Shown here: in pieces, positions 13,407-31,842 of the stretch
Numbering within the stretch: position 1 is the first letter of the stretch
How the letters are laid out: every line of letters starts with the position of its first letter
IMG/VR virus record: IMGVR_UViG_3300035661_000001
Location: 1 to 64,000 of that record
DNA: 64,000 nucleotides
Direction: 5' to 3' (one strand)
Notes under the pieces: model-generated
Databases searched by the model: none
What the model saw: the letters and a program-made list of their open reading frames with translations, nothing else
What the model was told of the DNA's origin: nothing
Made by a program: the position numbers and the translations under genes

Positions 13407-13433
13407 TTGCAACTTTTACAGCAGGGAAAAAAT

Positions 13434-13673: not shown

Positions 13674-13674
13674 C

Positions 13675-14382: not shown

Positions 14383-14421
14383 AGCTGTTGTGCTCGATAT
14401 CATTTCATAAAGGAAAAACAT

Positions 14422-15534: not shown

Positions 15535-15563
15535 ACGATTAGTGCCGGTTATATTGTTTCTGT

Positions 15564-16127
15564 ATGAATACAATAACCGGCACTATCGAGTTACCACAAA
15601 CCAAAATATGTTATGGCTGCAATTTTTATATCGATCCAAAATGTTTTGGTAAACAGTCATCAGCAAAAGATGGTTTGCAAACGAGATGTAAAGATTGTAA
15701 AAAATTATCTGATGCCAAATACCATTTCTTAAATAGAGATAAGGTATTGGAAACTTCAAAGGCTTATCGAAAAGCCAATAAAGAGAAGATAGCCAAACAT
15801 CAAAAGAAATATGTTGAATCCAATCTTGATAAAATCAAGATCGTAAAACATAATAATTATAAGAGAAATAGAGTAAAACTTCTTAAAAAGAATAAAGAAT
15901 ATCTAGCTTCGCATCCAGAGGTTAGGAAGAGGGCAACTAAGAAGTATTACGATAAAAATAAGCTCTATTACCAAAAAAAGAATCGGGTTGTTGATCCTGT
16001 TCTTTGCACTTTATCTTTTCGTTGGGACACCCCTCTTTGTTGCGGGGAACATTCAGGCGATCATCATATGGACGATCATGTATTTTCTGATTCTTTGTAT
16101 GATCATTGGAGCCTATCTGGCAATTGA
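15564..16127 (+). pseudogene. Truncated homing-endonuclease gene fused out of frame to a membrane-gene remnant
   Basis: CxxC...KDGLQTRCKDCK and Lys-rich linker with no nuclease domain; 15985-16134 in another frame encodes a 2-TM paralog of 16136-16306. Confidence 0.6.
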
Positions 16128-16135
16128 TAATTGAT

Positions 16136-16306
16136 ATGACCAATACAAAAATTGGCGTCATACTGATTGCGGTCTCGATCTATGTAATGGTTTTGATTCC
16201 CATCTTGATGGATCCTAACTCTATCAAAACGGTTGCTCTATGGACTGTGATATACATTCTATTAGGCATCATGGTCTTTGGTGTCTACATGATCATGAAC
16301 GACTGA
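16136..16306 (+). CDS. small 2-TM membrane protein
   Basis: Hydrophobic ORF. Confidence 0.6.
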   Translation: MTNTKIGVILIAVSIYVMVLIPILMDPNSIKTVALWTVIYILLGIMVFGVYMIMND

Positions 16307-16528
16307 TTTGAATTCTATATGAAAATCATCCTTGGAGATAAGTTTGAAGCTCGTAACTGTCCAAGGGCTTGAGCAATACTCACTGTAACCGTGATCAGAT
16401 ATTACGAGCAGACCAAAGGTAAAAAGCACAAAAAACTTATCACTGTTATCGGCGAAGGTTGTGCTTGGCACAATGCCCCTGCCGGTGAATTCAGAAACAG
16501 GAAGTACTGGAGAAAACTTTAAATCACA

Positions 16529-17392
16529 ATGAGTACCGGATATAGTTCACACGACAAGGTTAGCCAGATTCGATATACTCAGCCGCTTCTGTCGGATGAT
16601 GGAGTTATCTTCGATCCGGCTGGGTTGTGGACACCTAAGATTGATGCCAGAAGTCCTGCGTATCATTCTTTGTTCGAGCCTTTCGATTTGGATCAATATC
16701 TGTATCCACGTCCTCCCATCGATATGGGTTTGGTCGAGCATGAAGAATATTCATGTGATGTGAATGTCCTACGTATGCCGATCAAATTTCCTGGTACGAA
16801 CTATCGTATTCCAAAAGAAGTAATTGGGCTTCTCCCTGTTATTCAGAGGGCGGCAGAGTACGAAGCGTTCATCAATCCAAGGCATGCCCAGAGCTTTGCT
16901 CACGTTACTTTTGACACAAGTGAAGTTAAAGCTGGTGAGTTTCATCGTTTCCCTGGCTTTCATGGTGATGGTATTCAAGGAACTAAGCTCACGCCCAAAG
17001 TAGTGGCTGAGCATTCCTATATCATGACTACAAATCCTCCGACGGAGTTCTGTCTTCAGCCCTTCTTTTTGAAGCATCTAGATGAGGCGAAGCACAATTT
17101 TTTTCTGGAGTTCGATCGTCAGGCGAAAGATTGCAACGTATATGGTTCGTTGAGCGGGCATCTGTACCTGATCGATCCGTATATGGTTCACAGAACGCCG
17201 TTGATTACTCATCCGGTTCGGCGAACCTTCATAAGAGTAACCTTCTCTTGTATTGAGTTGCAGCACCCCAAAAATACTTTGAACCCGATGTTCCGAGGTC
17301 AAGAGTATGAGAAGCGCATTGATATTCGTGAACGTCTGACTCGCAATGAGTTTGATGTGCCGCTACATCTGTATGGTCTATCGTTAAAATGA
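16529..17392 (+). CDS. putative 2OG-Fe(II) dioxygenase-like protein
   Basis: GFHGDG (HxD), distal VHRT, RTFIRVT. Confidence 0.6.
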   Translation: MSTGYSSHDKVSQIRYTQPLLSDDGVIFDPAGLWTPKIDARSPAYHSLFEPFDLDQYLYPRPPIDMGLVEHEEYSCDVNVLRMPIKFPGTNYRIPKEVIGLLPVIQRAAEYEAFINPRHAQSFAHVTFDTSEVKAGEFHRFPGFHGDGIQGTKLTPKVVAEHSYIMTTNPPTEFCLQPFFLKHLDEAKHNFFLEFDRQAKDCNVYGSLSGHLYLIDPYMVHRTPLITHPVRRTFIRVTFSCIELQHPKNTLNPMFRGQEYEKRIDIRERLTRNEFDVPLHLYGLSLK

Positions 17393-17549
17393 CAGAGCAA
17401 GAACTTGACATTGGTATTCGTAATCATCAAGAGCTTGAGGAAAGCTGGGTGCATTATAGTAAATTCACTACCACTCAAGCTAATCATCGTACAGATGATC
17501 CCGAAAAAGTAACTTGTCCTTCCTGCCGACGAGCCCTAAAAGTAAAGTA

Positions 17550-17870
17550 ATGAAAAGAATTTTCATAAAGCTGGAAGGTCCGATCAGACCGCGGTGGTTG
17601 TCTTCCGATCCTTTCTGGACCCAAATACGAAGCACAACCTGGAAGCCCGAAGGCGGGGAATTTGTCCACGGAGATAGTTACTTTCCGCAAACTTTTGCGG
17701 TAGTTCGCCACCGACGCAGCGGTGAACTATACGGTATCACACCTTACGTAGATAACTCTGGGTATTACAAAGGTTACATACTTGGTACGATTTTTCTTGT
17801 GAAAGAGATTGATCCTATCTCTCTTGTATTGGACACAGCTCCAGACCAAGAATATTTCATTCTCCAGTAA
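17550..17870 (+). CDS. hypothetical protein
   Basis: TAATG overlap with a small upstream ORF (17389-17550). Confidence 0.6.
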   Translation: MKRIFIKLEGPIRPRWLSSDPFWTQIRSTTWKPEGGEFVHGDSYFPQTFAVVRHRRSGELYGITPYVDNSGYYKGYILGTIFLVKEIDPISLVLDTAPDQEYFILQ

Positions 17871-17874
17871 ATCT

Positions 17875-18144
17875 ATGGATGCAAGAACTCTCTTTTCAAA
17901 ACTCAAAACCGAAACGGTTGATGTTGATTGTCTTAAAGAAGGAGACATTATTCACCTGGACTATTGTATTGCGATAGTCCAATCGGTTACCCATCATGAG
18001 GAAAGTCAGTGGAGAGAATGTATAGAGCTGGAATGGGAGTCTGATGGAGATTCTTCGTCGATCATTTATCCAGCTAATACTCCAGGCTACAATCGTAAAT
18101 GGGCAAGACAGACAATCATTGCCCGTGAATTTCTACGAGAATAA
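17875..18144 (+). CDS. hypothetical protein
   Basis: ORF; start adjusted. Confidence 0.6.
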   Translation: MDARTLFSKLKTETVDVDCLKEGDIIHLDYCIAIVQSVTHHEESQWRECIELEWESDGDSSSIIYPANTPGYNRKWARQTIIAREFLRE

Positions 18145-18630
18145 ATGATGTGGTTTCAGAATCTTGCAGATCGGGAAGAAGCTGGTTGGTTTCAAGAGTT
18201 CCATAGTAATCCCGACAAGTTCGGCGACCTCTGGGCAATGACACCAAGCTATAAACTTCTGCCACCAGAAGGAGAGAATGATATCATTCTTCTCTCTACT
18301 GGAGGGTTTGCTCCCATCCATGATGGTCACATTGACATGATGGAAGCTGCAAAGATTCATATGGAGTCCAAAGGGTTCCGTGTTCGTGGCGGATATGTTT
18401 CTCCTGGTCATGATGGTTACGTCGTGGCACACAAAGGAGTTAAGATCTATGCGCCCGAACGATTGGCTTATGCCAACAACAAACTCAAAAGTCATCCGTG
18501 GATCATGGTTGATCCATGGGAAGCCATCGGTTGTAGTTGCAGTGTTAACTTCACGACGTACAAGAGTTCTATGGTAAGTCTCGAATCATCGTTCGTGGTG
18601 ATATCGAATTCACGGCGTTGGATTGACTGA
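18145..18630 (+). pseudogene. NMN/NaMN adenylyltransferase-like (HxGH) gene, apparently C-terminally truncated
   Basis: LLSTGGFAPIHDGH, GGYVSPGHDGYV, WIMVDPWE; ends soon after VNFTT with no ISST-type motif. Confidence 0.6.
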
Positions 18631-18644
18631 GTAAAAAATAAACA

Positions 18645-19190
18645 ATGTTTGTTTCTAGAACTCTCAAAGAAGATCTTGATACCAAAGGCGTCACTGGCTG
18701 GTTTGTCCACGAGATTTTTTCTCGTGACTATCACAGCGATGGCGAACTGTTGAGCTGGACTTTTCTTCCTTATGTGGCAGGACTTCCAGTTGCAAGAACA
18801 TACCAAGAACGCTGTGGTAACGCTGAGCATTCTCAAGCTCTAGCTGACAGCGCAATGAGACTTTCTCTTCAATGCTTCCAAAAAACCCACGGGTTCAAAA
18901 CTATGGGGAAAGAACTGGAAGAAGTATTGAAGAGAAATTCCAAGTACAGCACTCACAAGTTCTTTGAAGATATTCGACTCAAACATAGTCGAACTATCAT
19001 GGGTGATGTGATTGAGAGATCGTTCTGGTGCAGTCTTCATCGCCATGAAACTTATGGTGCGAAGCCTTTCGGATACAGTCCGATCAAGCAGGCGGCTAGT
19101 GCCGCACATGTATTTTCGGCAGCTTGTCCCATCCTCGGTGACGAAGATGTTTGGACGGAAGCCTTGAATGTTCTGCAATCCTTGAATTGA
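18645..19190 (+). CDS. hypothetical protein
   Basis: 181-aa ORF. Confidence 0.7.
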   Translation: MFVSRTLKEDLDTKGVTGWFVHEIFSRDYHSDGELLSWTFLPYVAGLPVARTYQERCGNAEHSQALADSAMRLSLQCFQKTHGFKTMGKELEEVLKRNSKYSTHKFFEDIRLKHSRTIMGDVIERSFWCSLHRHETYGAKPFGYSPIKQAASAAHVFSAACPILGDEDVWTEALNVLQSLN

Positions 19191-19202
19191 GAAGAGTAGT
19201 TT

Positions 19203-19580
19203 ATGAATTTCAAAAACATGTTGGTCGGTCTCTTCTGTTCTATTGCTGTCGTCGGTTGCGCCGGCGGTGTAGGAGACGGCTGCTGTGGTTGGTCCGGGCG
19301 TGACATCAGCGGTGTTGGTCAGGTGAAGAAAGTTCGTCTTGATACTCCGATCCTTTGCCCGGATTATCATGAGGTTGACATTTCTCTTGGTGTCATGCGC
19401 AATGGTGTAGGCTCGATGTCGACGAATGATATGACGCTGTTCATTCCGGAAAATCTGGTTCCAGAGTTGAAGAAGGCGGCAGAAGCTGGTGCTCTCATTA
19501 ATTTTACTTATGATGAGCGCCGTGCTAGTTGGTGTGTTGGTACCACCGACCGGCTGACTTCATTCAAGTTGGCTCAGTAA
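19203..19580 (+). CDS. putative lipoprotein
   Basis: Signal peptide with VVGC lipobox. Confidence 0.75.
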   Translation: MNFKNMLVGLFCSIAVVGCAGGVGDGCCGWSGRDISGVGQVKKVRLDTPILCPDYHEVDISLGVMRNGVGSMSTNDMTLFIPENLVPELKKAAEAGALINFTYDERRASWCVGTTDRLTSFKLAQ

Positions 19581-19584
19581 AACA

Positions 19585-19899
19585 ATGCCTGAAAATAATT
19601 GGGCACAAGCCATTCGAGATCAAATCAAGAAGGCGGAATACGACACGACGCCTGAGGGTAGGGCAGACATCGCGTTAGATCAGTTGCCACAACAGGTTTA
19701 TCGCGCCAAAAAATCGCGTGAAAAAAGAGTTGTAATCTGTTCCCTTTGGAAATGGAACGGTGAAAAAACGCTTAATGATCTTGTTGGATCTGATAGGATC
19801 ATTGTTCAAAAATTGATGGCTGAAGGATTCAGTCCTTTCATTCATTATAATTATGACGACATGGACGGTGGTAGATACTGCCTTTGTTTGCCGGTGTAG
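19585..19899 (+). CDS. hypothetical protein
   Basis: ORF track. Confidence 0.7.
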   Translation: MPENNWAQAIRDQIKKAEYDTTPEGRADIALDQLPQQVYRAKKSREKRVVICSLWKWNGEKTLNDLVGSDRIIVQKLMAEGFSPFIHYNYDDMDGGRYCLCLPV

Positions 19900-19914
19900 T
19901 GCTTCAAAAGTTTT

Positions 19915-19981
19915 AGGTGGGTTATAGGAACCCTTCTTTCTAATTTACTTAAAATAAAATAGGGTTTCTGCTTCCCCATCT
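19915..19981 (+). ncRNA. Conserved hairpin motif, copy A
   Basis: AGGTGGG-TTAT-AGGAACCCT-TCTTTCTA...AGGGTTTCT-GCTTC-CCCATCT. Confidence 0.75.
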
Positions 19982-19996
19982 TTTAGCGAGGATATA

Positions 19997-20563
19997 ATGG
20001 ATAGTCCGTTCTTTAGCAAGGCTACAATCGTTAACACACTACATCGTCAGGTCAAATGGCTTACCGAAGAAGAATTGTCTTCTCTCGCTGAGCAATATTC
20101 TTATGAAGACAAGGTCTTGCATAGTGGTTGGGGTTTCTGCCACCACATTGTTCATCAGGGCTATCTTCGATCTTTTGTCAACTTTTGCAAGCATAAGTTT
20201 GATTCAAAAGTAAAGAAGCGTCAGACTCCTCCCCAATCAAGAATCAGAGAAGTAATTTCTCGTACCATTGATATGGGAAGTGTTAACATTCCTGATGCAG
20301 AAAAATACGATATTTTTGCCCGATCGATCGATTGGACTATCTATTCAGAGTTCGTGAAGCAAAAGATAGCTCAGAAAAAAGATCTTACGAATGACGAGAA
20401 GCTCACGCTTCTTGTTAAACGTTATCATGAATCTGGGCTTGACGGCAAGATCATGAAATCGTGGAAGTGGCGTTCACAATGGTTGAAATCTATTGACGCC
20501 ATCCATTTAAAAATCGAAGATGAAGAAGACGAGCAGTACGGTTACGGCATGTACGGTGGCTGA
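19997..20563 (+). CDS. hypothetical protein (N-domain shared with 20576-21529)
   Basis: LH.Q..WL.E.E...LA....Y.D....SG..FC..RQ.PP motif. Confidence 0.8.
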   Translation: MDSPFFSKATIVNTLHRQVKWLTEEELSSLAEQYSYEDKVLHSGWGFCHHIVHQGYLRSFVNFCKHKFDSKVKKRQTPPQSRIREVISRTIDMGSVNIPDAEKYDIFARSIDWTIYSEFVKQKIAQKKDLTNDEKLTLLVKRYHESGLDGKIMKSWKWRSQWLKSIDAIHLKIEDEEDEQYGYGMYGG

Positions 20564-20575
20564 GGACAAACAAAA

Positions 20576-21529
20576 ATGACCAACAAATTGACTCCACAGC
20601 AAGATCATTTGGCTAATCAACTGCATGAACAAATGCAATGGCTTCATGAACATGAAATGAGAGATCTAGCCAACATCGTTGGTTATGATGATTGTTTCGC
20701 CTATAGTGGCTTGCTGTTTTGTCGATACGTTGTGCAGAACGATTTGACCAGTACGCTTGTAAAGCAGGCTAGCGTATATACTGATCGAGTTAGTCTTCGA
20801 CAGAATCCACCCATCGATAAGGTGAGAGAGATTCTTCTTGAAGCCTTCCAGTTCAAGGGAGAAGCCGTTGAGACATTCGCAATGGATGTTGATATGAAAG
20901 TCTATGCGGCGATGAATGATGGTATGTCATGTTCGCAGCGAAACAGACGCCGGTTCTTTGAAAAATCTGAAGGCAAAAAACTGGATAAGTTGTTTGAGCT
21001 GATGACACCAGCTCAGATAATGAAAGGTTTGTCTTCCGCTCATTGGCATAAAGCTTTCTTGCAAGCCATCGATTTTGTTTGTGGCAAAGAAGAAATGCCT
21101 CTTCTGTTTGGCGTGAAATCAAATGGAGTGTCTGTGGATCGTGATCTGTTGACTCAACAACGTCATGATGCGCAAGTAACTGCCGCTTCGTTTGCTAGAC
21201 AAAGGCAAGCTGCCATTCATGAAATGGAGCTAGAGGAAATGAAGCGTGACGCTGCTGATCAAAAGAGATTGGCTGAAAAATACGCCGCCGAAGCTGCGGA
21301 AAGAAAACTTGAACAGGTTTCCGAAAAGAAGATTGCTCCTGTTCAACAAGCAGTAGAATCTCCCGCGAAAAGATATAGCAATACAGATCCGTATCAATAT
21401 GATCTGTATTACCAGCAACAGCGCGAGCGACGAGAGAATGGATATGCTAGAGAGCCCGTGAATGAGACCGAGCGTGCTGAAGAGCATGCTTTTACTTGGG
21501 GCAATGGGGCTAGACCTTCCTTCTACTGA
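20576..21529 (+). CDS. hypothetical protein with coiled-coil C-terminus (paralog of 19997-20563)
   Basis: Shared N-domain; A/E/Q/R-rich tail. Confidence 0.8.
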   Translation: MTNKLTPQQDHLANQLHEQMQWLHEHEMRDLANIVGYDDCFAYSGLLFCRYVVQNDLTSTLVKQASVYTDRVSLRQNPPIDKVREILLEAFQFKGEAVETFAMDVDMKVYAAMNDGMSCSQRNRRRFFEKSEGKKLDKLFELMTPAQIMKGLSSAHWHKAFLQAIDFVCGKEEMPLLFGVKSNGVSVDRDLLTQQRHDAQVTAASFARQRQAAIHEMELEEMKRDAADQKRLAEKYAAEAAERKLEQVSEKKIAPVQQAVESPAKRYSNTDPYQYDLYYQQQRERRENGYAREPVNETERAEEHAFTWGNGARPSFY

Positions 21530-21542
21530 GATACAAAAATTT

Positions 21543-21606
21543 TGGTGGGCTATTAGAATCCTTCCTTCTACTCTTTTTAAGCAACAGGGTTCTGGCTTTC
21601 CCATCA
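21543..21606 (+). ncRNA. Conserved hairpin motif, copy B
   Basis: TGGTGGG-CTAT-TAGAATCCT-TCCTTCTA...AGGGTTCTG-GCTTT-CCCATCA. Confidence 0.8.
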
Positions 21607-21618
21607 GTTTCAACTAAC

Positions 21619-21675
21619 ACTGGCTATCAAGGATCTTCCTTCTACTTTGGCGTTTCAGATCCTTGGCTTTCCAGT
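21619..21675 (+). ncRNA. Conserved hairpin motif, copy C
   Basis: ACTGG-CTAT-CAAGGATCT-TCCTTCTA...AGATCCTTG-GCTTT-CCAGT. Confidence 0.8.
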
Positions 21676-21697
21676 TTTTCTACAAAGGCAAAAACAA

Positions 21698-23788
21698 ATG
21701 AACAACGCTGTCAACATTCTTCTTCGTCATAACTACATCGAAATTCCTACTGGTAGTGGCGAATGTTCTGCCCAGGATCTTGCTACGGTACTGAGCAATT
21801 TGTCCTACTATGGACGGGCTCTCAGTGTTGATGCTTATCGGGCAGTGTGCCGATTGTCTCACGAAGAATTGACTCGTTGGTGGATGGTGATTGATAAGCA
21901 GCTCAGCGAGATCACTGGTGATAGTCGCAAAATGGATCGTTTTGTTGTCTATAAGAACTTTCCCAATGAAGTTCTCAGCAAGAGCGAAGCTGACTATTGG
22001 ATCCCCCAGATCCTTATGTATTGGGGTTTCCCTAATGATCTTTTCACTCAGCCCGAGGAGAAGCGCCCTGTCTTCGCAGAGAAGGGCAAGGCAATCGTTT
22101 TGTCCCGTGCTCGGAACGAGAGCCTCAATGATATCTTCGTCGCTTACCTGGCGGTCCCTGCGCGCTGGAAGAGCCATGAGAAAGATGATACTCTCTATCT
22201 GGCGGAGCACCTGCCGTTGCCGGCAGATAAGATTGCGTTCAAAGAGAACCTGATTACGCTTGCTACGCATTTCATTGACAGCAATGTGCCACTGCGAATC
22301 TCTTCGGCTACGGACGTTCTGCGTCTTGCGGTTGGACTGAGCAATGGTGATGTTTCTTTGGTGACGAAAAGCAAGTTCGTTTCTTTCCGTCGTCCCGCCC
22401 GTCGATACTTGTGTACTCTTCTGGAGAATAGTTCCAACCTGAGCGACGATATTGCTCGCCGTCCTGAAATGTTCAAGCGTCTTTTGCACCAGCTTCATCC
22501 TGGTGATTTCATTAAGGCATGCCCTAAGACTTGTGAGGTCATGGATAAGCTTTACTTTAACAAGGTAGAGTCTTATAACTCCAAGATCGAAAAGATGATT
22601 GCCGACAAGAATCCCGAGGTTCTCAAGGTGCTGGCTGGTCGTGCTGGTGAATTCCGCCGCCGTCTGGTTCATATGATTGAAATCTTTGGTGATAAGGCGG
22701 TCAAGGCTTTCAGTGATAAGAAGGTTCTTGCCAAGCTGACCAACGGTCAAGTGGTGGCACTTCGTACCTTCTTGGAGACTGTTAACACGAGATTTCATCG
22801 TGTGTTCCCGCCTGGTGGTAACTGGAACAAGCTTCAGATTGGTGAGGCTAAGTGGGTCGAAGAGACCCATCTCTTGGCACTGATCGAGGTTCTCGGAGAC
22901 GTTCTCAAGGACCGTCTTCCCAAGATCAAGTATCTTGATCCGAAGTCGGCGATGATCAAGTTGCCGAGTAATGGAGACGCAGGCGAGTACACGCGTGGAA
23001 CTTCGTTCCCGATCCCAGAAGGAATGACATTCATCCGTTCGGCAAGCTATTGGAAGATCAGTAGTAAGGGCTACGTCTGGTTTGACAATGGTTGGAACTT
23101 CTTTACTGACGAGTGGAAGAACATGGGTTCTGTCGGTTGGAGAGATCCGTTCTTCGGCGGTGTTGCCAAGAAGGATCGACGCGGGTATCTTACCCGTAGC
23201 AATGAGGATGCTGCGGCAGTCTTCTCTGGTGATCCTACCAATACCAAGGAGATGAAGGGTCGCGCTTGTCAGATGATCGATCTGTATCTGGAGCGATTGA
23301 AGACTGAGGGAGTGCGCTATGCTGTGTGGAACATCCTGGCATACAGCAAGATTCCCTTCTCTGATGCTGAAGATGTGTTCGCTGCCCTTCAGTGGGGCGA
23401 GCATGCAGCAGAAGGAAAGCTGTTCGAGCCGGCGCGATGTCAGGTTGCGTTCCCGCTGACCAGTAAGCAGATGACCAAGTACATCGTGATGATCGATCTT
23501 GAGAAGCGTGAGATGATTTATCTGGATGCTAACTTGGCGGGCGATGTCAGTTCTGCTGGAGCTAATGGCGATCGGTTGGAGAAGACCATGCCTGCGATGG
23601 TTGAGTATCTTCGGTCTCTCCCATCCGTTCATGATCTGTTCATTGAATCAGTTGCTCCGGAAGGTGAGCTGAGCATCATGTATTCCGACAAGGATGTCAA
23701 GCTGGAGGGTGGGAAGGCATTTGTTTTTCGCCCAGAGAATAAAGAAAATCATTATACCAGAGTGGGAATCAATTCTCTACTTACATAA
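21698..23788 (+). CDS. MXAN_6230/SCO0854-like protein with C-terminal TerD-related domain
   Basis: VYKNFPNEV...PQILMYWG, RPEMFKRLLHQLHPG, RAGEFRRRL, then FSGDPTN...ACQMIDLYL...REMIYLD; family recalled, not searched. Confidence 0.65.
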   Translation: MNNAVNILLRHNYIEIPTGSGECSAQDLATVLSNLSYYGRALSVDAYRAVCRLSHEELTRWWMVIDKQLSEITGDSRKMDRFVVYKNFPNEVLSKSEADYWIPQILMYWGFPNDLFTQPEEKRPVFAEKGKAIVLSRARNESLNDIFVAYLAVPARWKSHEKDDTLYLAEHLPLPADKIAFKENLITLATHFIDSNVPLRISSATDVLRLAVGLSNGDVSLVTKSKFVSFRRPARRYLCTLLENSSNLSDDIARRPEMFKRLLHQLHPGDFIKACPKTCEVMDKLYFNKVESYNSKIEKMIADKNPEVLKVLAGRAGEFRRRLVHMIEIFGDKAVKAFSDKKVLAKLTNGQVVALRTFLETVNTRFHRVFPPGGNWNKLQIGEAKWVEETHLLALIEVLGDVLKDRLPKIKYLDPKSAMIKLPSNGDAGEYTRGTSFPIPEGMTFIRSASYWKISSKGYVWFDNGWNFFTDEWKNMGSVGWRDPFFGGVAKKDRRGYLTRSNEDAAAVFSGDPTNTKEMKGRACQMIDLYLERLKTEGVRYAVWNILAYSKIPFSDAEDVFAALQWGEHAAEGKLFEPARCQVAFPLTSKQMTKYIVMIDLEKREMIYLDANLAGDVSSAGANGDRLEKTMPAMVEYLRSLPSVHDLFIESVAPEGELSIMYSDKDVKLEGGKAFVFRPENKENHYTRVGINSLLT

Positions 23789-24328
23789 TGAATGTTTGTA
23801 AACTCTTTCTAGCCAATCAAAAAATTGTTGTTTAGACATATTATGTTTGGCTACGTTGCATGTAAAACAACACGTAACGCAATTCGCCAACGTATGTGAT
23901 AATGAGTTATCAACTCTATCTAAACCATTATAAGTGAACTGATATTGATCATATCGTGGTCTATTTTTGGGACATTTATTAACTGTGTGAGCCGGAGCAC
24001 TACCACAATAGTGGCAATTCATCTGGCTCATTTCAAGAAATTTTTCAAAAGTAATATCTGCTTCACCATAATTATGGTGATAGTAGATGGCATTTGCTGA
24101 AACTATTCTTGGAACTACAAATCTTTTGGTCAAATCAAAATGTTGACCACAATTTTTAATTTCCCCATTACGTAGTAGGGCTCCAAATACAGTATGATAA
24201 TTACCGCAAGAACAAAGGCATTTCCAATATATCTTTTTTCTTTTTGTGTTGCTAAATACTGTATCTGACTTTTCTATTACTGTAAGTAATCCAAATGTTT
24301 TTCCGGTTAAATCTATGAGTTTTGACAT
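23777..24328 (-). mobile_element. HNH homing endonuclease inserted in the 3' end of the TerD-like gene
   Basis: DLTGKTFGLLTVI..WKCLCSCG N-domain; CHYCG...GLDRVDNS...NCVTCCFTCNVAK; AT-rich. Confidence 0.85.
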
Positions 24329-24379
24329 ATCTGTTGTTCTCGTATTGTAATCGTTTACAAAGATAACAGATTATTTATA

Positions 24380-24433
24380 GAAAACAAAGACAACGTCTAC
24401 GATCGAGTTCCGCTCAACAAGTTGTTGGGCTGA
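24380..24433 (+). pseudogene. Displaced ancestral 3' end of the TerD-like gene
   Basis: Encodes ENKDNVYDRVPLNKLLG*, versus the current C-terminus ENKENHYTRVGINSLLT*. Confidence 0.75.
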
Positions 24434-24444
24434 GGTATTCCAAC

Positions 24445-24900
24445 ATGAATATGTATCTCGCGGCTTTGCATCTTACCAAACGTGAAGTATTTGAAAATGC
24501 TATGCGGCGGTTTCAATTCAGACGAGAAGAGAGTCTTCTTGTAATTCATGATGGTAAGATGTGGTTGTTTGAACGTAAAGACAACTCAGTTTCTATCAGA
24601 CCCATCCATGGTTTCGTGGTGGGACTGGTACAGGAGGATTGGAATCCTGATGGCAAAGCCGGCAAATATACCAGACATACCAGATATGTTGCTCAAATAT
24701 CTTGGAAGTCCGGCGGCGAACCAACCGGCAAGTGGTTCTCCCATGAAGTTGATTCAACTATTTCTACAGCCTATGTATTTTGGGAGATGAAGAATCTCAA
24801 TACATTCCTTGATAATTTTGAAGATGATTTCTTCAAATTGAAACAAGGTAAGGAGATATTCCTAGTTCCTGTCACAGTAGAGCTGGGTAAAATATCGTAA
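24445..24900 (+). CDS. hypothetical protein
   Basis: GAGG SD. Confidence 0.7.
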   Translation: MNMYLAALHLTKREVFENAMRRFQFRREESLLVIHDGKMWLFERKDNSVSIRPIHGFVVGLVQEDWNPDGKAGKYTRHTRYVAQISWKSGGEPTGKWFSHEVDSTISTAYVFWEMKNLNTFLDNFEDDFFKLKQGKEIFLVPVTVELGKIS

Positions 24901-24906
24901 AGTTTC

Positions 24907-24992
24907 GGCGGGCTATGAGGGTTCTTCCTTCTAAATTAAAAAGCCTCGGGCTAATAACCCGAATAAAAATCTAGAGCCCTCGCTTCCCCGCT
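24907..24992 (+). ncRNA. Conserved hairpin motif, copy D (extra TCGGG/CCCGA hairpin in the loop)
   Basis: GGCGGG-CTAT-GAGGGTTCT-TCCTTCTA...AGAGCCCTC-GCTTC-CCCGCT. Confidence 0.8.
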
Positions 24993-25012
24993 ATTTTTGT
25001 TTGGAGTATACG

Positions 25013-25243
25013 ATGAGAGAAAGTGGATACTATTGGGTAACATGTTCTATTCTTGGATGTATCCATAATGATCATGATAAACCGCAAGTTGCTTACTACA
25101 ATAGTGAAGACACGGATCAGCCATGGATGTTAATCTATGACGAAAACACTTACAATGAGAGAGACTTCCGTGTGATCGAGAAGGTCTCTTCGCCTCCAAT
25201 TGAAGGTCGCCAGCGTGTAACGCTTGCTTCGCCAATTGGTTGA
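25013..25243 (+). CDS. small conserved phage-type protein
   Basis: GGAG SD; MRESGYYWV...W...W pattern. Confidence 0.7.
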   Translation: MRESGYYWVTCSILGCIHNDHDKPQVAYYNSEDTDQPWMLIYDENTYNERDFRVIEKVSSPPIEGRQRVTLASPIG

Positions 25244-25256
25244 AGGATAAAATTTC

Positions 25257-25319
25257 GGTGGGCTATAAAGATCCTTCCTTCTATTTTGGTTTAAATTTCA
25301 GGGTCTTTGCTTTCCCATC
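25257..25319 (+). ncRNA. Conserved hairpin motif, copy E
   Basis: GGTGGG-CTAT-AAAGATCCT-TCCTTCTA...AGGGTCTTT-GCTTT-CCCATC. Confidence 0.8.
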
Positions 25320-25355
25320 AACACTTAAGCGCTCTTCAAGAAGGAAACGCGATAC

Positions 25356-25688
25356 ATGAGCGGAAACTATCAACGCTGGAGTGCAACGATACGTAACTGG
25401 TTTGAGTTCGTGCTCTCTTTCTGGGAAGACGGAACGGATCTCGATCCGCATGATCATGGCGGATCGTCGGGATATGTTTTTCTTTGGTGGGGTGAACTTC
25501 ATGAAAGATCGTTCGTAGAAGAGAATGGAAAGCTAGTTCAGAAGGATCAACTGGTAATGCGGGGTCCTGCTTTCAATCGAATCACCGCTTCTGATATCCA
25601 TGACGTTAAGGCATGTGGGTTTGCAATGGCGACCCATCTGTACTATCCTCCAATCAAGAACGGTAAGAAATTCAAAAGACCGGAGTAG
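25356..25688 (+). CDS. cysteine dioxygenase-like cupin
   Basis: PHDHGGS..V..GELHE...IHDV...THLYYPP matches the CDO HxH...H...HxYxPP pattern. Confidence 0.75.
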   Translation: MSGNYQRWSATIRNWFEFVLSFWEDGTDLDPHDHGGSSGYVFLWWGELHERSFVEENGKLVQKDQLVMRGPAFNRITASDIHDVKACGFAMATHLYYPPIKNGKKFKRPE

Positions 25689-25741
25689 ATTTTACGTATG
25701 GCAAAGAAGAATTCTTCGAGGCAAGAGACGCAAATCTTGGC

Positions 25742-26071
25742 ATGCGTCGGGTTTCAAGAGCAATGGTCACGGGACTTTCTCTTGATCTTTTAGAAATGGA
25801 TCAACGCATTCAAGTATACTCATTGTATGGGGATCTTGAAGAAGATGTTGGATATATTCCACGTAAGACCGGACTATTTTTTCCTGTAGGCATTCCTTCT
25901 GCAGAGCATGAGATTGCTCATATGGTAGAGATGCGCAACAAGGAAAGATGGACCATGACAGATTTTGGTTTCTCTAAATCAAATGATGAATGGAAATCTA
26001 CAAAAAATTTGTTCGCTGAATTTATATCACCTGAAATAGGAATACAAAATGAAAATTTTGATTTTAGATGA
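25742..26071 (+). CDS. hypothetical protein (start uncertain, possibly truncated)
   Basis: HEIAHMVE (HExxH); overlaps the next gene. Confidence 0.45.
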   Translation: MRRVSRAMVTGLSLDLLEMDQRIQVYSLYGDLEEDVGYIPRKTGLFFPVGIPSAEHEIAHMVEMRNKERWTMTDFGFSKSNDEWKSTKNLFAEFISPEIGIQNENFDFR

Positions 26072-26492
26072 TACTGTCCGACGGCTGAACGTCTTTCGTT
26101 TCTTGTATGAAGAGCAGGGTCATGAAGTTGTAACCGTGATGAAGTATCATGATTGCTTGGATCAATTGGAGTCCTATTTTCATTGGGATCTTTTGCATCT
26201 AGATCATGATCTCGGAGACTTCGTCGTTGATGCCGACTTCTATCTAGATGGCAATAACAAACGCCAATTTTACACTGGCGGTCATATAGTACAAGAGTTG
26301 CTTCGTAAAGTTTGGCTTGGGCATCCTGTCCCCAAACGAGTAATCGTTCACTCTATCAATCCACAAGGTAGGGCGATGAGCGATGATCTGAATAGATATG
26401 GTATTCCTACAACATGGGAGCCGTATGTTGATCCTGGTATTCGGATCCCATCACGAGATGATGGTGGGCTAGAAGAGGATGAAAATGTCTGA
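26049..26492 (+). CDS. cyclic-phosphate-processing receiver-like domain protein
   Basis: KILILDD...LHLDHDLG...TG..IV...IVHSINP.G signature. Confidence 0.75.
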   Translation: MKILILDDTVRRLNVFRFLYEEQGHEVVTVMKYHDCLDQLESYFHWDLLHLDHDLGDFVVDADFYLDGNNKRQFYTGGHIVQELLRKVWLGHPVPKRVIVHSINPQGRAMSDDLNRYGIPTTWEPYVDPGIRIPSRDDGGLEEDENV

Positions 26493-26832
26493 ACGTAAAA
26501 CCGCGCTGCTCTTTTTCCAAAAAGATATCGAAGAAGCTTTCCAGTTTTGGTGTGATAATAGTCAGAAGACTATCGGTCCTTTTCTGTTCCAGACTAGGAT
26601 GCAGTTTGGTTTGGAACTGATCTATTTTCTAGTTCCTACCGTTCCATATCATGGAAACACCAAGCTAGTATGGTCAAAAGCTGTCACAATATCGAAAGAA
26701 GAGCTATCTGAGGCTATGGATCTTTTGATTTGTAGTAGGAATTTGCGTAGCGAGTTTGGCTATTGGTTGAGAATTTCCGCCAACGTCAACGGCGTCGAGA
26801 TTGCTGCGATCCCTCACGATAAAAAGATTTAG
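26479..26832 (+). CDS. hypothetical protein
   Basis: GAGG SD; overlap. Confidence 0.65.
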   Translation: MKMSERKTALLFFQKDIEEAFQFWCDNSQKTIGPFLFQTRMQFGLELIYFLVPTVPYHGNTKLVWSKAVTISKEELSEAMDLLICSRNLRSEFGYWLRISANVNGVEIAAIPHDKKI

Positions 26833-27096
26833 GAATCCTAGAGATTCTAAAAAGAAGTTTGCTGAGTTTCTGTTGGGTAACCCCCGTTTGTCGTTTTCAA
26901 ACGACACATAAAACCAGCGCTCCCATCATCGGGGAGTAAAGGACATGGGCGCCAGGCGAAAGGCTAGCGGCAAATATCGGATAGGAGAATGAAGATTCAA
27001 GGCGTGGCGCTTTCAACCCAGCGTCAGACCAGCGATGATATCATTTTCCAGTGACCTCGATTAAGCGCTGTTAGATCACGAGTACCCACTGCCCAG

Positions 27097-27175
27097 GTGT
27101 TGTGGTGGCTAGGTGCCACGCAGCTTTCCTGTCTCGAAAGCTGAAGACCGGTTCAAATCCGTGGCAACACGCCCA
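27097..27175 (+). ncRNA. Non-canonical tRNA-like RNA, GUC (Asp) loop on an 8-bp anticodon stem
   Basis: GTGTTGT/GCAACAC acceptor; TGGC/GCCA D stem; CAGCTTTC-CTGTCTC-GAAAGCTG; GG-TTCAAAT-CC. Confidence 0.55.
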
Positions 27176-27281
27176 GTTTTAAGTCAACAACTTGACATAT
27201 AATGTCAAGAAATTGTTGTGCATTGTTTGGTGTAAATCTTTTCATTACAGAAGAACAGCTCATGAAAATCGCGAGATTCAA

Positions 27282-27884
27282 ATGAAAAAAATGCCTTGCT
27301 TATTGGCCCGTATTTTTCACGGACCCAATTCTTTCACTCTAACAGATCAGGTCACGCCTGGGTGTGAGTGGGTACTTGATGGTATTGGTATTGCTTCCCG
27401 TAAATGGGATGGCACTGCCTGTGCCATTATTGATGGCATGCTTTACAAACGCTTCGATGCCAAACGAAAACCGGACGGTACCTACAAAGATATTCCAGTA
27501 AGGGCAATCCCTTGCGGTGATGCTGATCCTATTACGGGTCACCATCCTCATTGGGTAGCATTGTCATACAGTGCAAACCAGGATAAGCATCACGTCTCAG
27601 CTTGGATTAACTTCCTGAAAGAAAACAAATACAAAACGCCTACTGATGGAACCTACGAATTGATCGGACCTCCCATCGGAAATAATCCGGAAGGTGTTGA
27701 TCGTATGATGTTCAAACGTCATGGTGATATGGTTCTTGAAGTTCCCAGAACCATTAACGGCATCACCGAGTATCTTGCAACTCATCTCTTGGAAGGTATT
27801 GTGTTCACCAATTTTGATGGTAGGTGTTGCAAGATCCGTCGAAAAGATTTCGGATTTACATGGAATGGTTATGTCAAATCGTGA
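27282..27884 (+). CDS. DUF5565/RLIG1-like ATP-dependent RNA ligase
   Basis: Motif I RKWDGT; LYKRFD; GHHPHWV; DGTYELIGP; EGIVF; KIRRKDFG. Confidence 0.75.
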   Translation: MKKMPCLLARIFHGPNSFTLTDQVTPGCEWVLDGIGIASRKWDGTACAIIDGMLYKRFDAKRKPDGTYKDIPVRAIPCGDADPITGHHPHWVALSYSANQDKHHVSAWINFLKENKYKTPTDGTYELIGPPIGNNPEGVDRMMFKRHGDMVLEVPRTINGITEYLATHLLEGIVFTNFDGRCCKIRRKDFGFTWNGYVKS

Positions 27885-27980
27885 ACCTAGAACAGTGCAA
27901 GATGTAAAGTTCGCATTAACGGTATCGTTGATCTGCGGACTCTTCTGTATCATTTTGATTTTAAGTTATCCTTATCTTTC

Positions 27981-28277
27981 TTGAGGGCGCTCATGTTTGA
28001 CAGAGAAGCCGCCCTTAGAAAGATTCAGATTGTATCACGTTACTCACATAACGGTTATCATTTGATGGTAGGAGATATTGATCTTTCTGTTAGAAAGATA
28101 GATGAAGGTCATAAAATCTATCAGATATCAGCAGTGAGCTGGATTGATCAATACAGTCCAGTTCTTATGTTTGAGGTCGAGGAAATGACTTGTAATCAAG
28201 CCGTAGATCGTTTTCAAGAATACCTGTGTCAGTTTGAATTATCTGACGCACTGTTTGGATGGATTGGTGTGCTATGA
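27981..28277 (+). CDS. hypothetical protein
   Basis: ORF track; start may be ATG 27993. Confidence 0.6.
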   Translation: MRALMFDREAALRKIQIVSRYSHNGYHLMVGDIDLSVRKIDEGHKIYQISAVSWIDQYSPVLMFEVEEMTCNQAVDRFQEYLCQFELSDALFGWIGVL

Positions 28278-28522
28278 GTTTCTCCATAACACATGGTACC
28301 GTTCCCCGAAAAGATCTTTTCAATAGGGCATTGAGTGAAGTATTGCGCCCAAATTATCCAATCCGTTTCCGTAATTGCCCGCGAATGGGTAATGTGGATT
28401 TGGGTGGAGAGCAGTTCTACCTTGAGTTGGTAAGAGCTAAAAAAGATAATACAATAGAATCTTTAGAATGGCTGAGGAGACATTTGTACTTCTTGGATAT
28501 TCATTGGGATAGTCGGCAGTAA
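28259..28522 (+). CDS. hypothetical protein
   Basis: ORF track; likely start ATG 28274. Confidence 0.55.
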   Translation: MDWCAMSFSITHGTVPRKDLFNRALSEVLRPNYPIRFRNCPRMGNVDLGGEQFYLELVRAKKDNTIESLEWLRRHLYFLDIHWDSRQ

Positions 28523-28541
28523 CGGGTTTTTAACCCAAAGG

Positions 28542-30092
28542 ATGGATATGGCTAGTAAGAAAACTGCTCCGGCGGCTAAGAAAGCAAAGCCGGAGCGTGA
28601 TGAGTTTGGTCGTTTCAAAACGAAGCTGGCAGCAATTGTCGGCGTAGCTTCCAAGGTGGTCACGAAGAAAGAGCCTGTCAGTAATAAAATTCTGACGAAG
28701 GATCTTTCAAAACTTTTCAGTCGTGCCAGGGCGAAGAGTGGTAATCCCATTTTCCTTCGTGCGGTCAATCAGCGTACTTCCGATATCAAGGATCGGTACG
28801 GTTATACTTTCTCTTACGGTCGTCTTCTCCCCGAAGCTGATAGGGAAATGATTCTCATTGCTGAGAATGATTACGGAAGTGGATTGTTTTACCTTACGTA
28901 TGAAACCATGATCGGTGCGCAGCGTCGCTCCAGCTATTTCGATGCCAGTTTCGAGTGGGAGCAGATTGATCCTGATCACAAGGATTACCCTGCCCGCATG
29001 GCAGAATACGATGCGAATCGTATTAAGACGTTGAGCACACGTCTTCATTACGACGGCAAGATTGGGTGTGATCCCGAGGTTTTTGTGGAGAGCGCAGCTG
29101 GGAGTATGATCCCTGCATTCCTTTTTCTCCCCAGCAAAGAGAAGCCTGCGCGGACTCCCAATTGGTCGAAGCATTTTAACGGTCATGGTGGAACCACCAT
29201 GTATTGGGATGGATTTCAGGGAGAATACACTACCAAGGCAAATTATTGTCTTGGTTATCATGGCGACTCCATTGCCGCTGGTTTGCGCGGTATCTATGAC
29301 GCAGCTCGAAAAAGGTTCAAGGATAGCAAGCTGAGTCTGCGTTCCGTCTTCCATCTTTCTCCGGAGATTTTGGAAGGTGCTCTCGATGAGCACGTTGCGT
29401 TTGGTTGCATGCCGAGCCTCAACGCATATGGTCTGAAGGTGAATATGCCTCCCGCTCGTGAGGTTCCTTTCCGGTCTGCTGGTGGTCATATCCACTTCGG
29501 TATCGGTAAGAAAAACCATCCCAAGGCTGGGAAAATCGTCAAGGCTCTTGACGCTGTTCTTGGTGTGGCTTGCGTGAGTTTGTTCGCAGAGTTCGATGAT
29601 CCTAATCGTCGCAAGCTGTATGGTTTGCCTGGCGAGTACCGTCTCCCTCCTCACGGCATTGAATACCGTACGTTGTCCAACGCGTGGCTGAGCCACCCGT
29701 TGATCATGAACATGGTGTTCGATCTTGCAAGGAAGGCAGTTATCTTTGGCAAGGATGATTACTTCGAGAAGCATTGGGTTGCTACAGAAGAGGAAGTTAT
29801 CAATTGCATTATCAATTGCGACGTGAAGGCGGCGCATAAGATGATGGAGAGAAACAAGGAAGCATTCCTTCAGTTGCTGAAGGCTTCTTATAGCTCTGCA
29901 CAGCCTGCTGAATTGGAGATGCTATATCAGGTCTTCATCAAGGGCATTCGTTCGGCTATCAAAGACCCTCTCGATCTGACTACCAATTGGCGGTTGGAAA
30001 GCGGTTGGAAGCCTCATTCGGGCGTCGTCGGCGAGCCCAATGCGAGAACCTTCTTGTACAATCGTCGCAACGATAGTGAGTGCAAGATGTGA
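28542..30092 (+). CDS. phiEco32-like COOH-NH2 ligase type 2, copy 1
   Basis: IGCDPEVF, WDGFQGE, FGCMP, FRSAGGHIHFG, RRKLYG.PGEYR, GIEYRTLSN. Confidence 0.9.
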   Translation: MDMASKKTAPAAKKAKPERDEFGRFKTKLAAIVGVASKVVTKKEPVSNKILTKDLSKLFSRARAKSGNPIFLRAVNQRTSDIKDRYGYTFSYGRLLPEADREMILIAENDYGSGLFYLTYETMIGAQRRSSYFDASFEWEQIDPDHKDYPARMAEYDANRIKTLSTRLHYDGKIGCDPEVFVESAAGSMIPAFLFLPSKEKPARTPNWSKHFNGHGGTTMYWDGFQGEYTTKANYCLGYHGDSIAAGLRGIYDAARKRFKDSKLSLRSVFHLSPEILEGALDEHVAFGCMPSLNAYGLKVNMPPAREVPFRSAGGHIHFGIGKKNHPKAGKIVKALDAVLGVACVSLFAEFDDPNRRKLYGLPGEYRLPPHGIEYRTLSNAWLSHPLIMNMVFDLARKAVIFGKDDYFEKHWVATEEEVINCIINCDVKAAHKMMERNKEAFLQLLKASYSSAQPAELEMLYQVFIKGIRSAIKDPLDLTTNWRLESGWKPHSGVVGEPNARTFLYNRRNDSECKM

Positions 30093-30095
30093 TGA

Positions 30096-30143
30096 TTGAA
30101 TGATCTCCGAGGTAGAAATGGTATTACCTCGGAGATCATTCAA
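30096..30143. repeat. 19-bp perfect inverted repeat after ligase 1
   Basis: TTGAATGATCTCCGAGGTA / TACCTCGGAGATCATTCAA with a 10-nt loop. Confidence 0.9.
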
Positions 30144-30299
30144 GTAGGTTGAACGGTGCGAACCCATCTCCGAATATTGAGTGGGAAGTACACCAAACGA
30201 GATGATTAGCAACCTAACGTGGTGAAGGGTTGCAAGTTCCCATCCAGCATAATCTGGATGATTGTTTGCTACAAAGACTTCAACAAAGAGAAAGAACAC

Positions 30300-31718: not shown

Positions 31719-31728
31719 GAGTCTGAGA

Positions 31729-31773
31729 CTAATGATGTCTAACCAATCGAACATATGGGTTAGACATCATTAG
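31729..31773. repeat. 16-bp perfect inverted repeat after ligase 2
   Basis: CTAATGATGTCTAACC / GGTTAGACATCATTAG. Confidence 0.9.
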
Positions 31774-31842
31774 GTTGAATAAACTGAAAGTGTTATAGTT
31801 CGTAAATAAACTTTCGGTATACCAAATCCGTGAGAGATCATC

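What the first reader, a model, noticed from the sequence alone, without database searches (positions are those of the whole stretch)
23735..24433. Homing endonuclease inserted into a gene's 3' end and supplied a recoded replacement C-terminus
Seen: the TerD-like gene ends ENKENHYTRVGINSLLT* (23735-23788, AT-rich codons, overlapping the HNH stop on the other strand). Beyond the HNH gene sits ENKDNVYDRVPLNKLLG* (24380-24433) in the C-ending codon style of the host gene, 10 of 17 residues identical. Inference: intron-free homing in which the element repairs the gene it interrupts, and the recoded junction protects it from re-cutting. The cut site should lie near 23730.
Basis: partly seen in the sequence, partly recalled or inferred. 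Interest (0 to 1): 0.6.

Follow-up and report, generated by a model that had tools for sequence, protein, structure and literature searches.

The report
Homing endonuclease carrying a spare gene tail
A selfish HNH endonuclease gene sits inside the end of a jumbo-phage gene and keeps that gene whole by bringing its own copy of the last 17 codons, leaving the original tail behind as a dead relic; the design is known from fungal mitochondria and recurs here in several phage genes.

Summary
Gene A (21647/21695..23788, +) ends in an AT-rich 17-codon tail. A 183-aa PacI-like HNH gene (23777..24328, -) overlaps its stop by 12 nt. A second, GC-rich copy of the tail (24380..24433) lies just beyond, 10/17 residues identical.

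The closest HNH-free relative (80% identical protein, locus L021) ends in the relic-type tail and is colinear with the window once 23735..24379 (645 nt) is removed. A second relative (L020) has a host gene only 76% identical in DNA but carries the same tail plus HNH at 98.7% identity, switching at 23735.

Two more gene A lineages carry related HNH genes at the same spot. One is a clean tail replacement with HNH-free siblings; the other has a partial relic. The same family shows the same design in a DNA methylase gene (six contigs) and in a cytidylyltransferase-like gene.

So this is a mobile cassette of surrogate gene tail plus homing endonuclease. Untested: cleavage, the cut site, and whether the recoding protects. 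It matches the 'mobile ORF with inserted C-terminus' of fungal mitochondria; four paper searches found no phage description. Interest is moderate.

The parts
21647..23734 (+). Host-derived body of gene A. The ORF runs from 21647; the probable ATG is at 21695. PHROG 33734, function unknown. The C-terminal domain has a TerD-like fold.
   Evidence: This part is 76.1% nt identical to L020. GC3 is 0.56.
23735..24379 (.). Mobile cassette of 645 nt (3 x 215, so in frame): surrogate tail, HNH gene and HNH upstream region. The left edge may lie up to about 20 nt further left (23714-23735).
   Evidence: There is a GC trough. Identity to L020 is 98.7% from 23735 onward, against 76.1% before it. Removing this segment makes the window colinear with the HNH-free locus L021.
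23735..23788 (+). Surrogate (cassette-borne) tail of gene A: ENKENHYTRVGINSLLT plus stop. This is the tail now translated.
   Evidence: It is identical in P0005/L020. GC3 is 0.24. In the model it forms a strand and a short helix of the TerD-like domain.
23777..24328 (-). PacI-like HNH endonuclease gene (183 aa, intact), convergent with gene A and overlapping its last 12 nt.
   Evidence: Pfam HNH E 0.006, below the cut-off. PHROGs HNH / endonuclease VII at 2e-13 and 3e-13. Family profile against PacI 3ldy at E 7e-8. Conserved CxYCG...YNGLDRVD...NCVxCCxxCNxAK.
24329..24379 (-). Upstream (5') region of the HNH gene and right end of the cassette, AT-rich.
   Evidence: A promoter-like match at 24399..24370 is not above chance.
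24380..24433 (+). Relic of the native tail: ENKDNVYDRVPLNKLLG plus stop. It has no start codon and is no longer joined to gene A. Its last bases hold the GAGG ribosome-binding site of the next gene.
   Evidence: It is colinear with the L021 tail, with 27 nt identical. It is closest to the P0006 tail among 118 family tails. GC3 is 0.71.
24445..24900 (+). Downstream gene (151 aa). Its homologue follows gene A directly in the HNH-free relative.

Best explanation
**What it is.** A free-standing homing endonuclease cassette is inserted in frame into the 3' end of gene A, after the Pro codon of the conserved FRP|ENK motif. The cassette (23735..24379) has three parts:
- a surrogate copy of the last 17 codons plus stop, so gene A still makes a full-length protein;
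- a PacI-like HNH endonuclease gene on the opposite strand, overlapping that stop;
- the upstream region of the HNH gene.

The native tail is pushed 645 nt downstream and survives as an untranslated relic. The relic still carries the ribosome-binding site of the next gene.

**How it probably works (inferred).** In a mixed infection the enzyme cuts the HNH-free allele in or next to the tail-coding sequence. The candidate site is the conserved stretch shared by empty alleles, around TTC CGA CCG GAG AAC AAG. The break is repaired from the carrier genome. The gene body serves as the left homology arm, and the native tail or downstream DNA as the right arm, so the cassette is copied in.

The carrier would be immune because its copy of the site is split by the insert and differs at many, mostly synonymous, positions. 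The surrogate tail does the job that self-splicing does for intron- or intein-borne endonucleases: it makes insertion into a coding sequence harmless.
For: **Shown**
1. Presence/absence polymorphism at this exact site. HNH-free L021 is colinear with the window minus 23735..24379.
2. Horizontal movement of tail plus HNH as one unit. Against L020 the host gene is 76.1% identical (1550/2037) and the cassette part 98.7% (235/238), switching at 23735.
3. The relic is native. It has the host's GC3 and is closest to the tail of the nearest HNH-free relative. The new tail has the HNH gene's GC3 and resembles tails of other family lineages.
4. Lineage B (HNH 56% identical). A 674-nt cassette replaces the 61-nt native tail between flanks that are 98.8% and 95.9% identical to HNH-free siblings. 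Two carriers with gene A 72-89% identical share an 850-nt tract at 100%.
5. Lineage C (HNH 51% identical). Same position, with a partial relic ...KPMDLNSILKQ* next to the HNH start.
6. The same HNH family shows the same design in other genes. In an N6_N4 DNA methylase gene on six contigs, the gene body is 55-62% identical, the surrogate tail 98-99%, the HNH 97-100% (one more distant contig, L186, gives 87-89% and 80-81%), and the relic 57-64% between different hosts, i.e. host-specific. A cytidylyltransferase-like gene in L077 has a 30-codon relic that keeps its ATGA overlap with the next gene.
7. The element is not an intron or intein. The HNH gene is on the opposite strand and there is no Rfam intron.
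8. The tail is a structured part of the TerD-like domain, so it plausibly has to be kept.
9. Empty alleles of lineages A and B share a 23-nt identical stretch across the insertion point. All carriers differ there.
Against: - No biochemical or read-level evidence.
- Cleavage, the cut site and the immunity of the carrier are inferred.
- The L020 contig breaks inside the HNH gene, so the right junction in the second lineage-A host is unseen.
- The nearest HNH-free allele is only 80% identical in protein.
- Lineage B has no relic, and there the co-converted tract reaches beyond the cassette. The tail could therefore be seen as ordinary co-converted flank.
- The family has DR where classical HNH enzymes have the DH general base. 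PacI, the solved relative, shares this, but activity here is untested.
- One close HNH relative (P0126, L031) is not next to gene A.
- Six paralogues in this genome show no flank duplication.
Confidence: 0.85

Rival explanations
1. Ordinary intronless homing with hitch-hiking flank. In the donor phage the HNH gene simply lay downstream of an AT-rich gene A. The new tail is co-converted donor DNA with no dedicated role. The relic in the window is the scar of one sloppy (illegitimate) right-hand junction.
For: In lineage B the native tail is cleanly replaced, and the 100%-identical tract extends about 50 nt left and 130 nt right of the cassette. Free-standing phage endonucleases are known to drag flanking markers and can cut far from their genes (PMC2988022).
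Against: The tail overlaps the HNH reading frame by 12 nt in lineage A and 37 nt in lineage B. Identity to L020 switches exactly at the start of the tail. In the methylase group the same surrogate tail rides with the HNH across hosts only 55-62% identical, each keeping its own relic. Relics recur in four independent contexts, which one-off sloppy junctions do not predict.
Confidence: 0.25
2. The HNH gene is a decayed or domesticated resident, no longer mobile (for example a nuclease used by the phage for another purpose). The tail duplication is an old fossil.
For: No activity data exist. The classical general-base His is absent. The genome holds six more paralogues, which could serve the phage.
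Against: The ORF is intact in all lineages. The cassette is 98.7-100% identical between diverged hosts. Carrier and empty siblings have near-identical flanks. The relic shows no faster decay than the host gene: about 78% identity to L021 by my count of the alignment, against 76-80% for the gene.
Confidence: 0.1
3. Local tandem duplication of the gene's end (or a transposon-like target-site duplication), followed by divergence in place. The HNH gene landed between the copies later.
For: There are two homologous 54-nt segments in direct orientation flanking the insert.
Against: The copies are only 46% identical in DNA, while the cassette is 98.7% identical to its copy in another host. The GC3 of the new tail equals that of the HNH gene, not that of the host. 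The new tail is found in a different host background.
Confidence: 0.03

Closest known systems
Mobile endonuclease ORFs (mORFs) that carry a foreign C-terminus in fungal mitochondria: Allomyces macrogynus atp6; Glomus sp. atp6, atp9, cox2 and nad3 (Beaudet et al. 2013, PMC3630166, which cites Paquin et al. 1994)
   Same: The order of parts is the same: gene core, inserted C-terminus in frame, endonuclease ORF, then the native C*-terminus left downstream. The native relic is closer to relatives than the inserted copy is. Replacement is partial or complete, depending on the case. The inserted end is read as horizontally acquired.
   Different: Here the genome is a phage, not a mitochondrion. The enzyme is a PacI-like HNH, not LAGLIDADG or GIY-YIG. 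In gene A the endonuclease gene is on the opposite strand and overlaps the host stop codon, so it cannot be fused to or co-translated with the host gene.
Intronless homing by free-standing endonucleases of T4-like phages: SegF, SegG, SegB, MobE (Edgell, Gibb and Belfort 2010, PMC2988022)
   Same: A free-standing endonuclease gene is present or absent between related phages. It is copied with flanking DNA by break repair. The carrier is protected by sequence differences at the target.
   Different: T4 elements sit between genes, and their cut sites may lie hundreds to thousands of bases from the gene. Here the element sits inside a coding sequence and supplies the displaced coding end. The insertion point seems to coincide with the likely target, as for intron-borne enzymes.
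MobE insertion that splits nrdA of phage Aeh1 into two genes (Friedrich et al. 2007, cited in PMC2988022; recalled from memory beyond the citation)
   Same: An HNH-family free-standing endonuclease is inserted inside a phage coding sequence without loss of gene function.
   Different: In Aeh1 the host gene is split into two polypeptides that reassemble. Here the gene stays in one piece and the displaced end is discarded.
Restriction endonuclease PacI (PDB 3ldy)
   Same: It is the closest solved sequence relative of the HNH family (profile E 7e-8). It shares the two zinc CxxC pairs and the GxDRxD...CxxCNxxK core.
   Different: PacI is a restriction enzyme of 142 aa. The phage proteins have an extra N-terminal Cys-rich region (LxGKxFGxLxV...CxCxCG) and behave as mobile genes.

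Membership tests
HNH (His-Me finger) endonucleases, PacI-like subgroup | Sequence match to the HNH / beta-beta-alpha-metal core, with paired Cys zinc sites and the conserved Asn | tested here: met
   Pfam HNH E 0.006, below the curated cut-off. PHROGs HNH / endonuclease VII at 2e-13 and 3e-13. Family profile against PacI 3ldy at E 7e-8. Invariant C105, C108, C153/C154, C157, N158 and K161.
HNH (His-Me finger) endonucleases, PacI-like subgroup | General-base histidine of the first 'H' | tested here: inconclusive
   All members have DR (invariant D137 R138) where classical HNH enzymes have DH. PacI aligns with the same GVDRSD. From memory, PacI is thought to use a tyrosine instead.
HNH (His-Me finger) endonucleases, PacI-like subgroup | Metal-dependent DNA cleavage | not testable with these tools
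   Needs expression and an in vitro assay.
Free-standing homing endonuclease genes (intronless homing) | Present or absent at the same site in otherwise related genomes | tested here: met
   Window against L021. L025-L030 against L032-L036, with flanks 98.8% and 95.9% identical.
Free-standing homing endonuclease genes (intronless homing) | The element is much more similar between hosts than its flanks are (horizontal spread, co-conversion) | tested here: met
   98.7% against 76.1%. 100% over 850 nt against 72-89%. In the methylase group, 97-100% against 55-62%.
Free-standing homing endonuclease genes (intronless homing) | Not housed in a self-splicing intron or an intein | tested here: met
   The HNH gene is on the opposite strand to gene A. 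No Rfam family reaches threshold in 23000..25000.
Free-standing homing endonuclease genes (intronless homing) | The enzyme cuts the element-free allele and spares the carrier; super-Mendelian inheritance in mixed infection | not testable with these tools
   Only a candidate target is inferred: the 23-nt stretch shared by empty alleles of lineages A and B and altered in all carriers.
Mitochondrial-type mORF elements with an inserted C-terminus | Inserted C-terminus in frame with the gene core, followed by an endonuclease ORF, followed by a native C-terminal relic that is closer to relatives | tested here: met
   The definition is taken from PMC3630166.
Mitochondrial-type mORF elements with an inserted C-terminus | LAGLIDADG or GIY-YIG endonuclease in an organelle genome, ORF co-oriented with or fused to the host gene | tested here: not met
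   Here it is a PacI-like HNH in a 452-kb phage genome, antisense to gene A. It works like an mORF but is not a member of those lineages.
TerD domain proteins (gene A) | Match to Pfam TerD | tested here: not met
   No Pfam family, even at E 10, for residues 400-696.
TerD domain proteins (gene A) | TerD-type beta-sandwich fold | tested here: met
   Model pLDDT 86. Foldseek hits 3ibz, 2kxt and 2qz7 at E 4e-6 to 4e-5, TM 0.65-0.70 by target.

The most novel reading that the evidence does not exclude
PacI-like HNH homing endonucleases of phages may have a general third way, beside introns and inteins, to live inside coding sequences: each cassette carries a surrogate 3' end of its target gene. The native end is left as a host-specific relic that doubles as the right-hand homology arm, so the cut site and the insertion site coincide. 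At least three unrelated target genes show this design (TerD-like gene A, an N6/N4 DNA methylase, a cytidylyltransferase-like gene). This would be a class of phage mobile element that has not been described as such, and a routine source of chimeric gene ends and short pseudogene relics in phage genomes.
Probability: 0.45. Interest if true: 0.7.

Novelty: new member of a known kind. Interest (0 to 1): 0.55.

Why it matters
Homing endonucleases were thought to need an intron, an intein or an intergenic site to avoid killing their host gene. This finding shows a third route in phages.

- **Annotation.** It explains a class of puzzles: short orphan ORF fragments next to HNH genes, and genes whose last codons have foreign codon usage.
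- **Testable target.** It gives a concrete, cheap-to-test candidate target site for an uncharacterised PacI-like enzyme family. Such enzymes are of interest as rare cutters.
- **Gene evolution.** These cassettes swap gene ends between phages that are only 55-76% identical in DNA, which is a mechanism of local mosaicism.
- **Protein function.** The conserved C-terminal strand and helix of the TerD-like domain appear to be needed, since every cassette replaces them.

Tried and rejected
**Searches that gave nothing**
- Exact-pattern scans of IMG/VR for the new tail, the relic and the 23-nt candidate target: 0 hits each.
- Metagenome scan for the HNH 5' end, to recover the right junction of the L020-type phage: 0 hits.
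- The second metagenome scan gave only HNH relatives at 42% identity or less, though these yielded the methylase cases.
- Ten IMG/VR gene A homologues (53% identity or less), plus XacN1 and Xoo-sp13: no HNH nearby and ordinary tails.
- 78 IMG/VR HNH relatives: none lies next to gene A.
- Four paper searches found no phage description of a tail-carrying HNH cassette. This library lacks most subscription journals.

**Ideas rejected**
- Group I intron or intein: rejected.
- A T4-type late promoter TATAAATA at the cassette's right end: the motif is not enriched (2 found, 1.8 expected), so dropped.
- Sigma-70-like promoters and terminators in the region: not above chance.
- Target-site duplication or tandem duplication: rejected.
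- The six other HNH paralogues of this genome: no flank duplication.
- L156: a high flank score, but it comes from an HTH domain shared by the HNH protein and its neighbour, not from a tail duplication.

**A lead only, and a step not taken**
- A 4-2-4 palindrome (TCCG NN CGGA) within the candidate target is preserved in several empty alleles and broken in carriers. It is about what chance allows, so it is kept only as a lead.
- An HNH-free sibling of lineage C was not sought, so one costly protein search was left unused.
Full report
**1. The observation**

The window is the first 64 kb of a 451,956-bp IMG/VR jumbo-phage genome.

- Gene A (ORF 21647..23788; probable ATG at 21695, 696 aa) ends ...AFVFRPENKENHYTRVGINSLLT*.
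- A 183-aa ORF on the other strand (23777..24328) overlaps its last 12 nt.
- 24380..24433 reads ENKDNVYDRVPLNKLLG*, with no start codon in frame.
- The two tails share 10/17 residues and 25/54 nt.

GC drops from about 0.50 to 0.30 across 23720..24380. GC3 is 0.56 in the gene body, 0.24 in the new tail, 0.23 in the HNH gene and 0.71 in the relic.

A six-frame comparison of the two flanks scores 50. Unrelated flank pairs give a median of 29 and a 95th percentile of 36-40.

**2. The genes**

*Gene A.* It has no Pfam family. It belongs to PHROG 33734, function unknown. Homologues include XacN1 ORF396 and Xoo-sp13_353, and there are more than 600 metagenomic relatives.

A model of its last 300 residues (pLDDT 86) matches TerD structures 3ibz, 2kxt and 2qz7. 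The last 17 residues form a strand and a short helix of that domain. Every family member ends with a tail of the same length and pattern.

*The minus-strand ORF.* It is an HNH nuclease:
- Pfam E 0.006, below the cut-off;
- PHROGs HNH / endonuclease VII at 2e-13 and 3e-13;
- a family profile against restriction enzyme PacI (3ldy) at E 7e-8.

The family keeps two Cys pairs and the Asn/Lys of the core. It has DR where classical HNH enzymes have DH, as PacI does.

**3. The decisive comparison (lineage A)**

The word-based protein search found two close relatives of gene A.

*P0006* (80% identical; locus L021) has no HNH gene.
- It ends ...FRPENKDNDNYTRVPLNKLLG*, the relic type.
- It is followed 9 nt later by the homologue of the window's 151-aa gene.
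- The window with 23735..24379 removed aligns colinearly with L021, in frame, through tail, stop, ribosome-binding site and next gene.

*P0005* (82% identical; locus L020) has the identical new tail and the same HNH 3' part.
- Its DNA is 76.1% identical to the window across the host gene (1550/2037).
- It is 98.7% identical (235/238) from 23735 to the contig end.
- The last host-type difference is at 23734.

Among 118 family tails the relic is nearest to P0006's. The new tail is nearest to tails of other lineages. So the tail and the HNH gene move together between diverged phages, and the relic is this phage's own tail.

**4. Two more gene A lineages**

*Lineage B* (HNH P0125, 56% identical).
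- In L025-L030 the HNH gene is convergent with gene A and overlaps it by 37 nt.
- The HNH-free siblings are L032-L036.
- Flanks are 98.8% and 95.9% identical. A 674-nt cassette replaces exactly the 61-nt native tail, with no relic.
- Two carriers whose gene A is 72-89% identical share an 850-nt tract at 100%. This tract extends beyond the cassette on both sides, which is co-conversion.

*Lineage C* (HNH P0127, 51% identical; L024). The HNH gene is in the same position, and a partial relic ...KPMDLNSILKQ* sits right next to its start.

*The candidate target.* Empty alleles of lineages A and B share 23 identical nucleotides over the codons V-F-R-P-E-N-K. Every carrier differs there, mostly at synonymous positions.

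**5. The same design in other genes**

I scanned 122 loci of the wider HNH family for flank duplication.

*DNA methylase group.* Six contigs show an N6_N4 DNA methylase gene (Pfam 3e-27) that ends in a cassette-borne tail of about 45 residues. It is followed by a co-oriented HNH gene and then a relic of the native tail.

| Segment | Nucleotide identity between contigs |
|---|---|
| Methylase body | 55-62% |
| Surrogate tail | 98-99% |
| HNH gene | 97-100% |
| Relic (different hosts) | 57-64% |

One more distant contig (L186) gives 87-89% for the tail and 80-81% for the HNH gene. The relics are host-specific.

*L077.* A cytidylyltransferase-like gene shows the same design. Its 30-codon relic still overlaps the next gene's start by ATGA.

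*L138.* This may be a further case.

The six HNH paralogues elsewhere in this genome are plain intergenic genes without duplication.

**6. Mechanism**

Shown: this is a mobile cassette made of surrogate tail plus HNH gene. It is present or absent at one site, is far more conserved than its flanks, and leaves or replaces the native tail.

Inferred: the enzyme cuts the empty allele in or near the conserved FRPENK codons. Repair copies the cassette from a co-infecting carrier. The carrier is immune because the site is split and recoded.

In lineage B, the carrier and empty alleles differ systematically only in the 61-nt tail. An active enzyme's target must therefore overlap that tail or its junctions.

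Where a relic is present, it provides homology directly next to the insert, and its end supplies the next gene's ribosome-binding site. The surrogate tail plays the role that splicing plays for intron-borne enzymes.

**7. Comparison with known systems**

- The order of parts is that of fungal mitochondrial 'mobile ORFs' with an inserted C-terminus and a native C*-terminal relic (PMC3630166).
- Spread by break repair with co-conversion is the intronless homing of T4-like phages, whose elements sit between genes and may cut far away (PMC2988022).
- What differs here: a phage genome, a PacI-like HNH enzyme, and antisense overlap with the host stop codon.

Four paper searches found no phage description, but that library is incomplete. 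I file it as a new member of a known kind.

**8. Limits**

- The L020 contig ends inside the HNH gene.
- The left edge of the cassette is only bounded to 23714-23735. The window and L020 share GTT TTT CGC where L021 has GTC TTC CGA.
- The origin of the AT-rich tail is unresolved.

Noticed in passing
whole genome G000 (window = 1..64000): There is strong compositional heterogeneity. GC is about 0.44 in 1-70 kb, about 0.32 in 80-410 kb, and 0.54-0.58 in 410-440 kb. The HNH cassette matches the AT-rich bulk, while gene A lies in a GC-rich arm. This could reflect mosaic ancestry or a chimeric assembly.
   Followed up: partly
window 21548, 21622, 24911, 25261 (+ strand); also L032:6087-6490 and the L024 intergenic region: A bipartite motif, GG[CG][CT]AT, then 4-10 nt, then T[CT]CTTCTA, occurs only four times in the 452-kb genome. 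All four flank the gene A module. The core TTCCTTCTA occurs 5 times in the window against 0.8 expected, and 0 of 100 shuffles reach 5. Three copies lie right after gene A in lineage B. It is probably a promoter or regulatory site tied to this module.
   Followed up: partly
G000: 190562-191134, 191920-192426, 269112-269714, 175829-176806, 102368-103123, 156593-156694: There are six further PacI-like HNH paralogues in the same phage (27-38% identical to the window's). Two lie about 800 nt apart. None shows flank duplication.
   Followed up: yes
L165, L170, L177, L179, L186, L194 (metagenome contigs); L077 (IMG/VR): HNH cassettes with surrogate tails sit in an N6_N4 DNA methylase gene and in a cytidylyltransferase-like gene. 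Each host keeps its own relic. L138 may be another case, with the relic fused in frame to the HNH C-terminus.
   Followed up: partly
window 21647..23788 and relatives: Gene A belongs to a large family of jumbo-phage proteins of about 700 aa (PHROG 33734; more than 600 hits at E <= 1e-20). It has an unannotated N-terminal 400 residues and a C-terminal TerD-like domain that Pfam does not detect.
   Followed up: partly
window 26049..26492 and 25356..25688: Precomputed Pfam hits are reported for neighbouring genes in the sibling contigs: cREC_REC (147 aa) and a weak CDO_I hit (110 aa).
   Followed up: no
G000 176600-177500 (locus L005): A small GC-rich island (0.57-0.61) sits inside the AT-rich bulk, next to an HNH paralogue. 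It holds a tRNA-Leu gene.
   Followed up: partly
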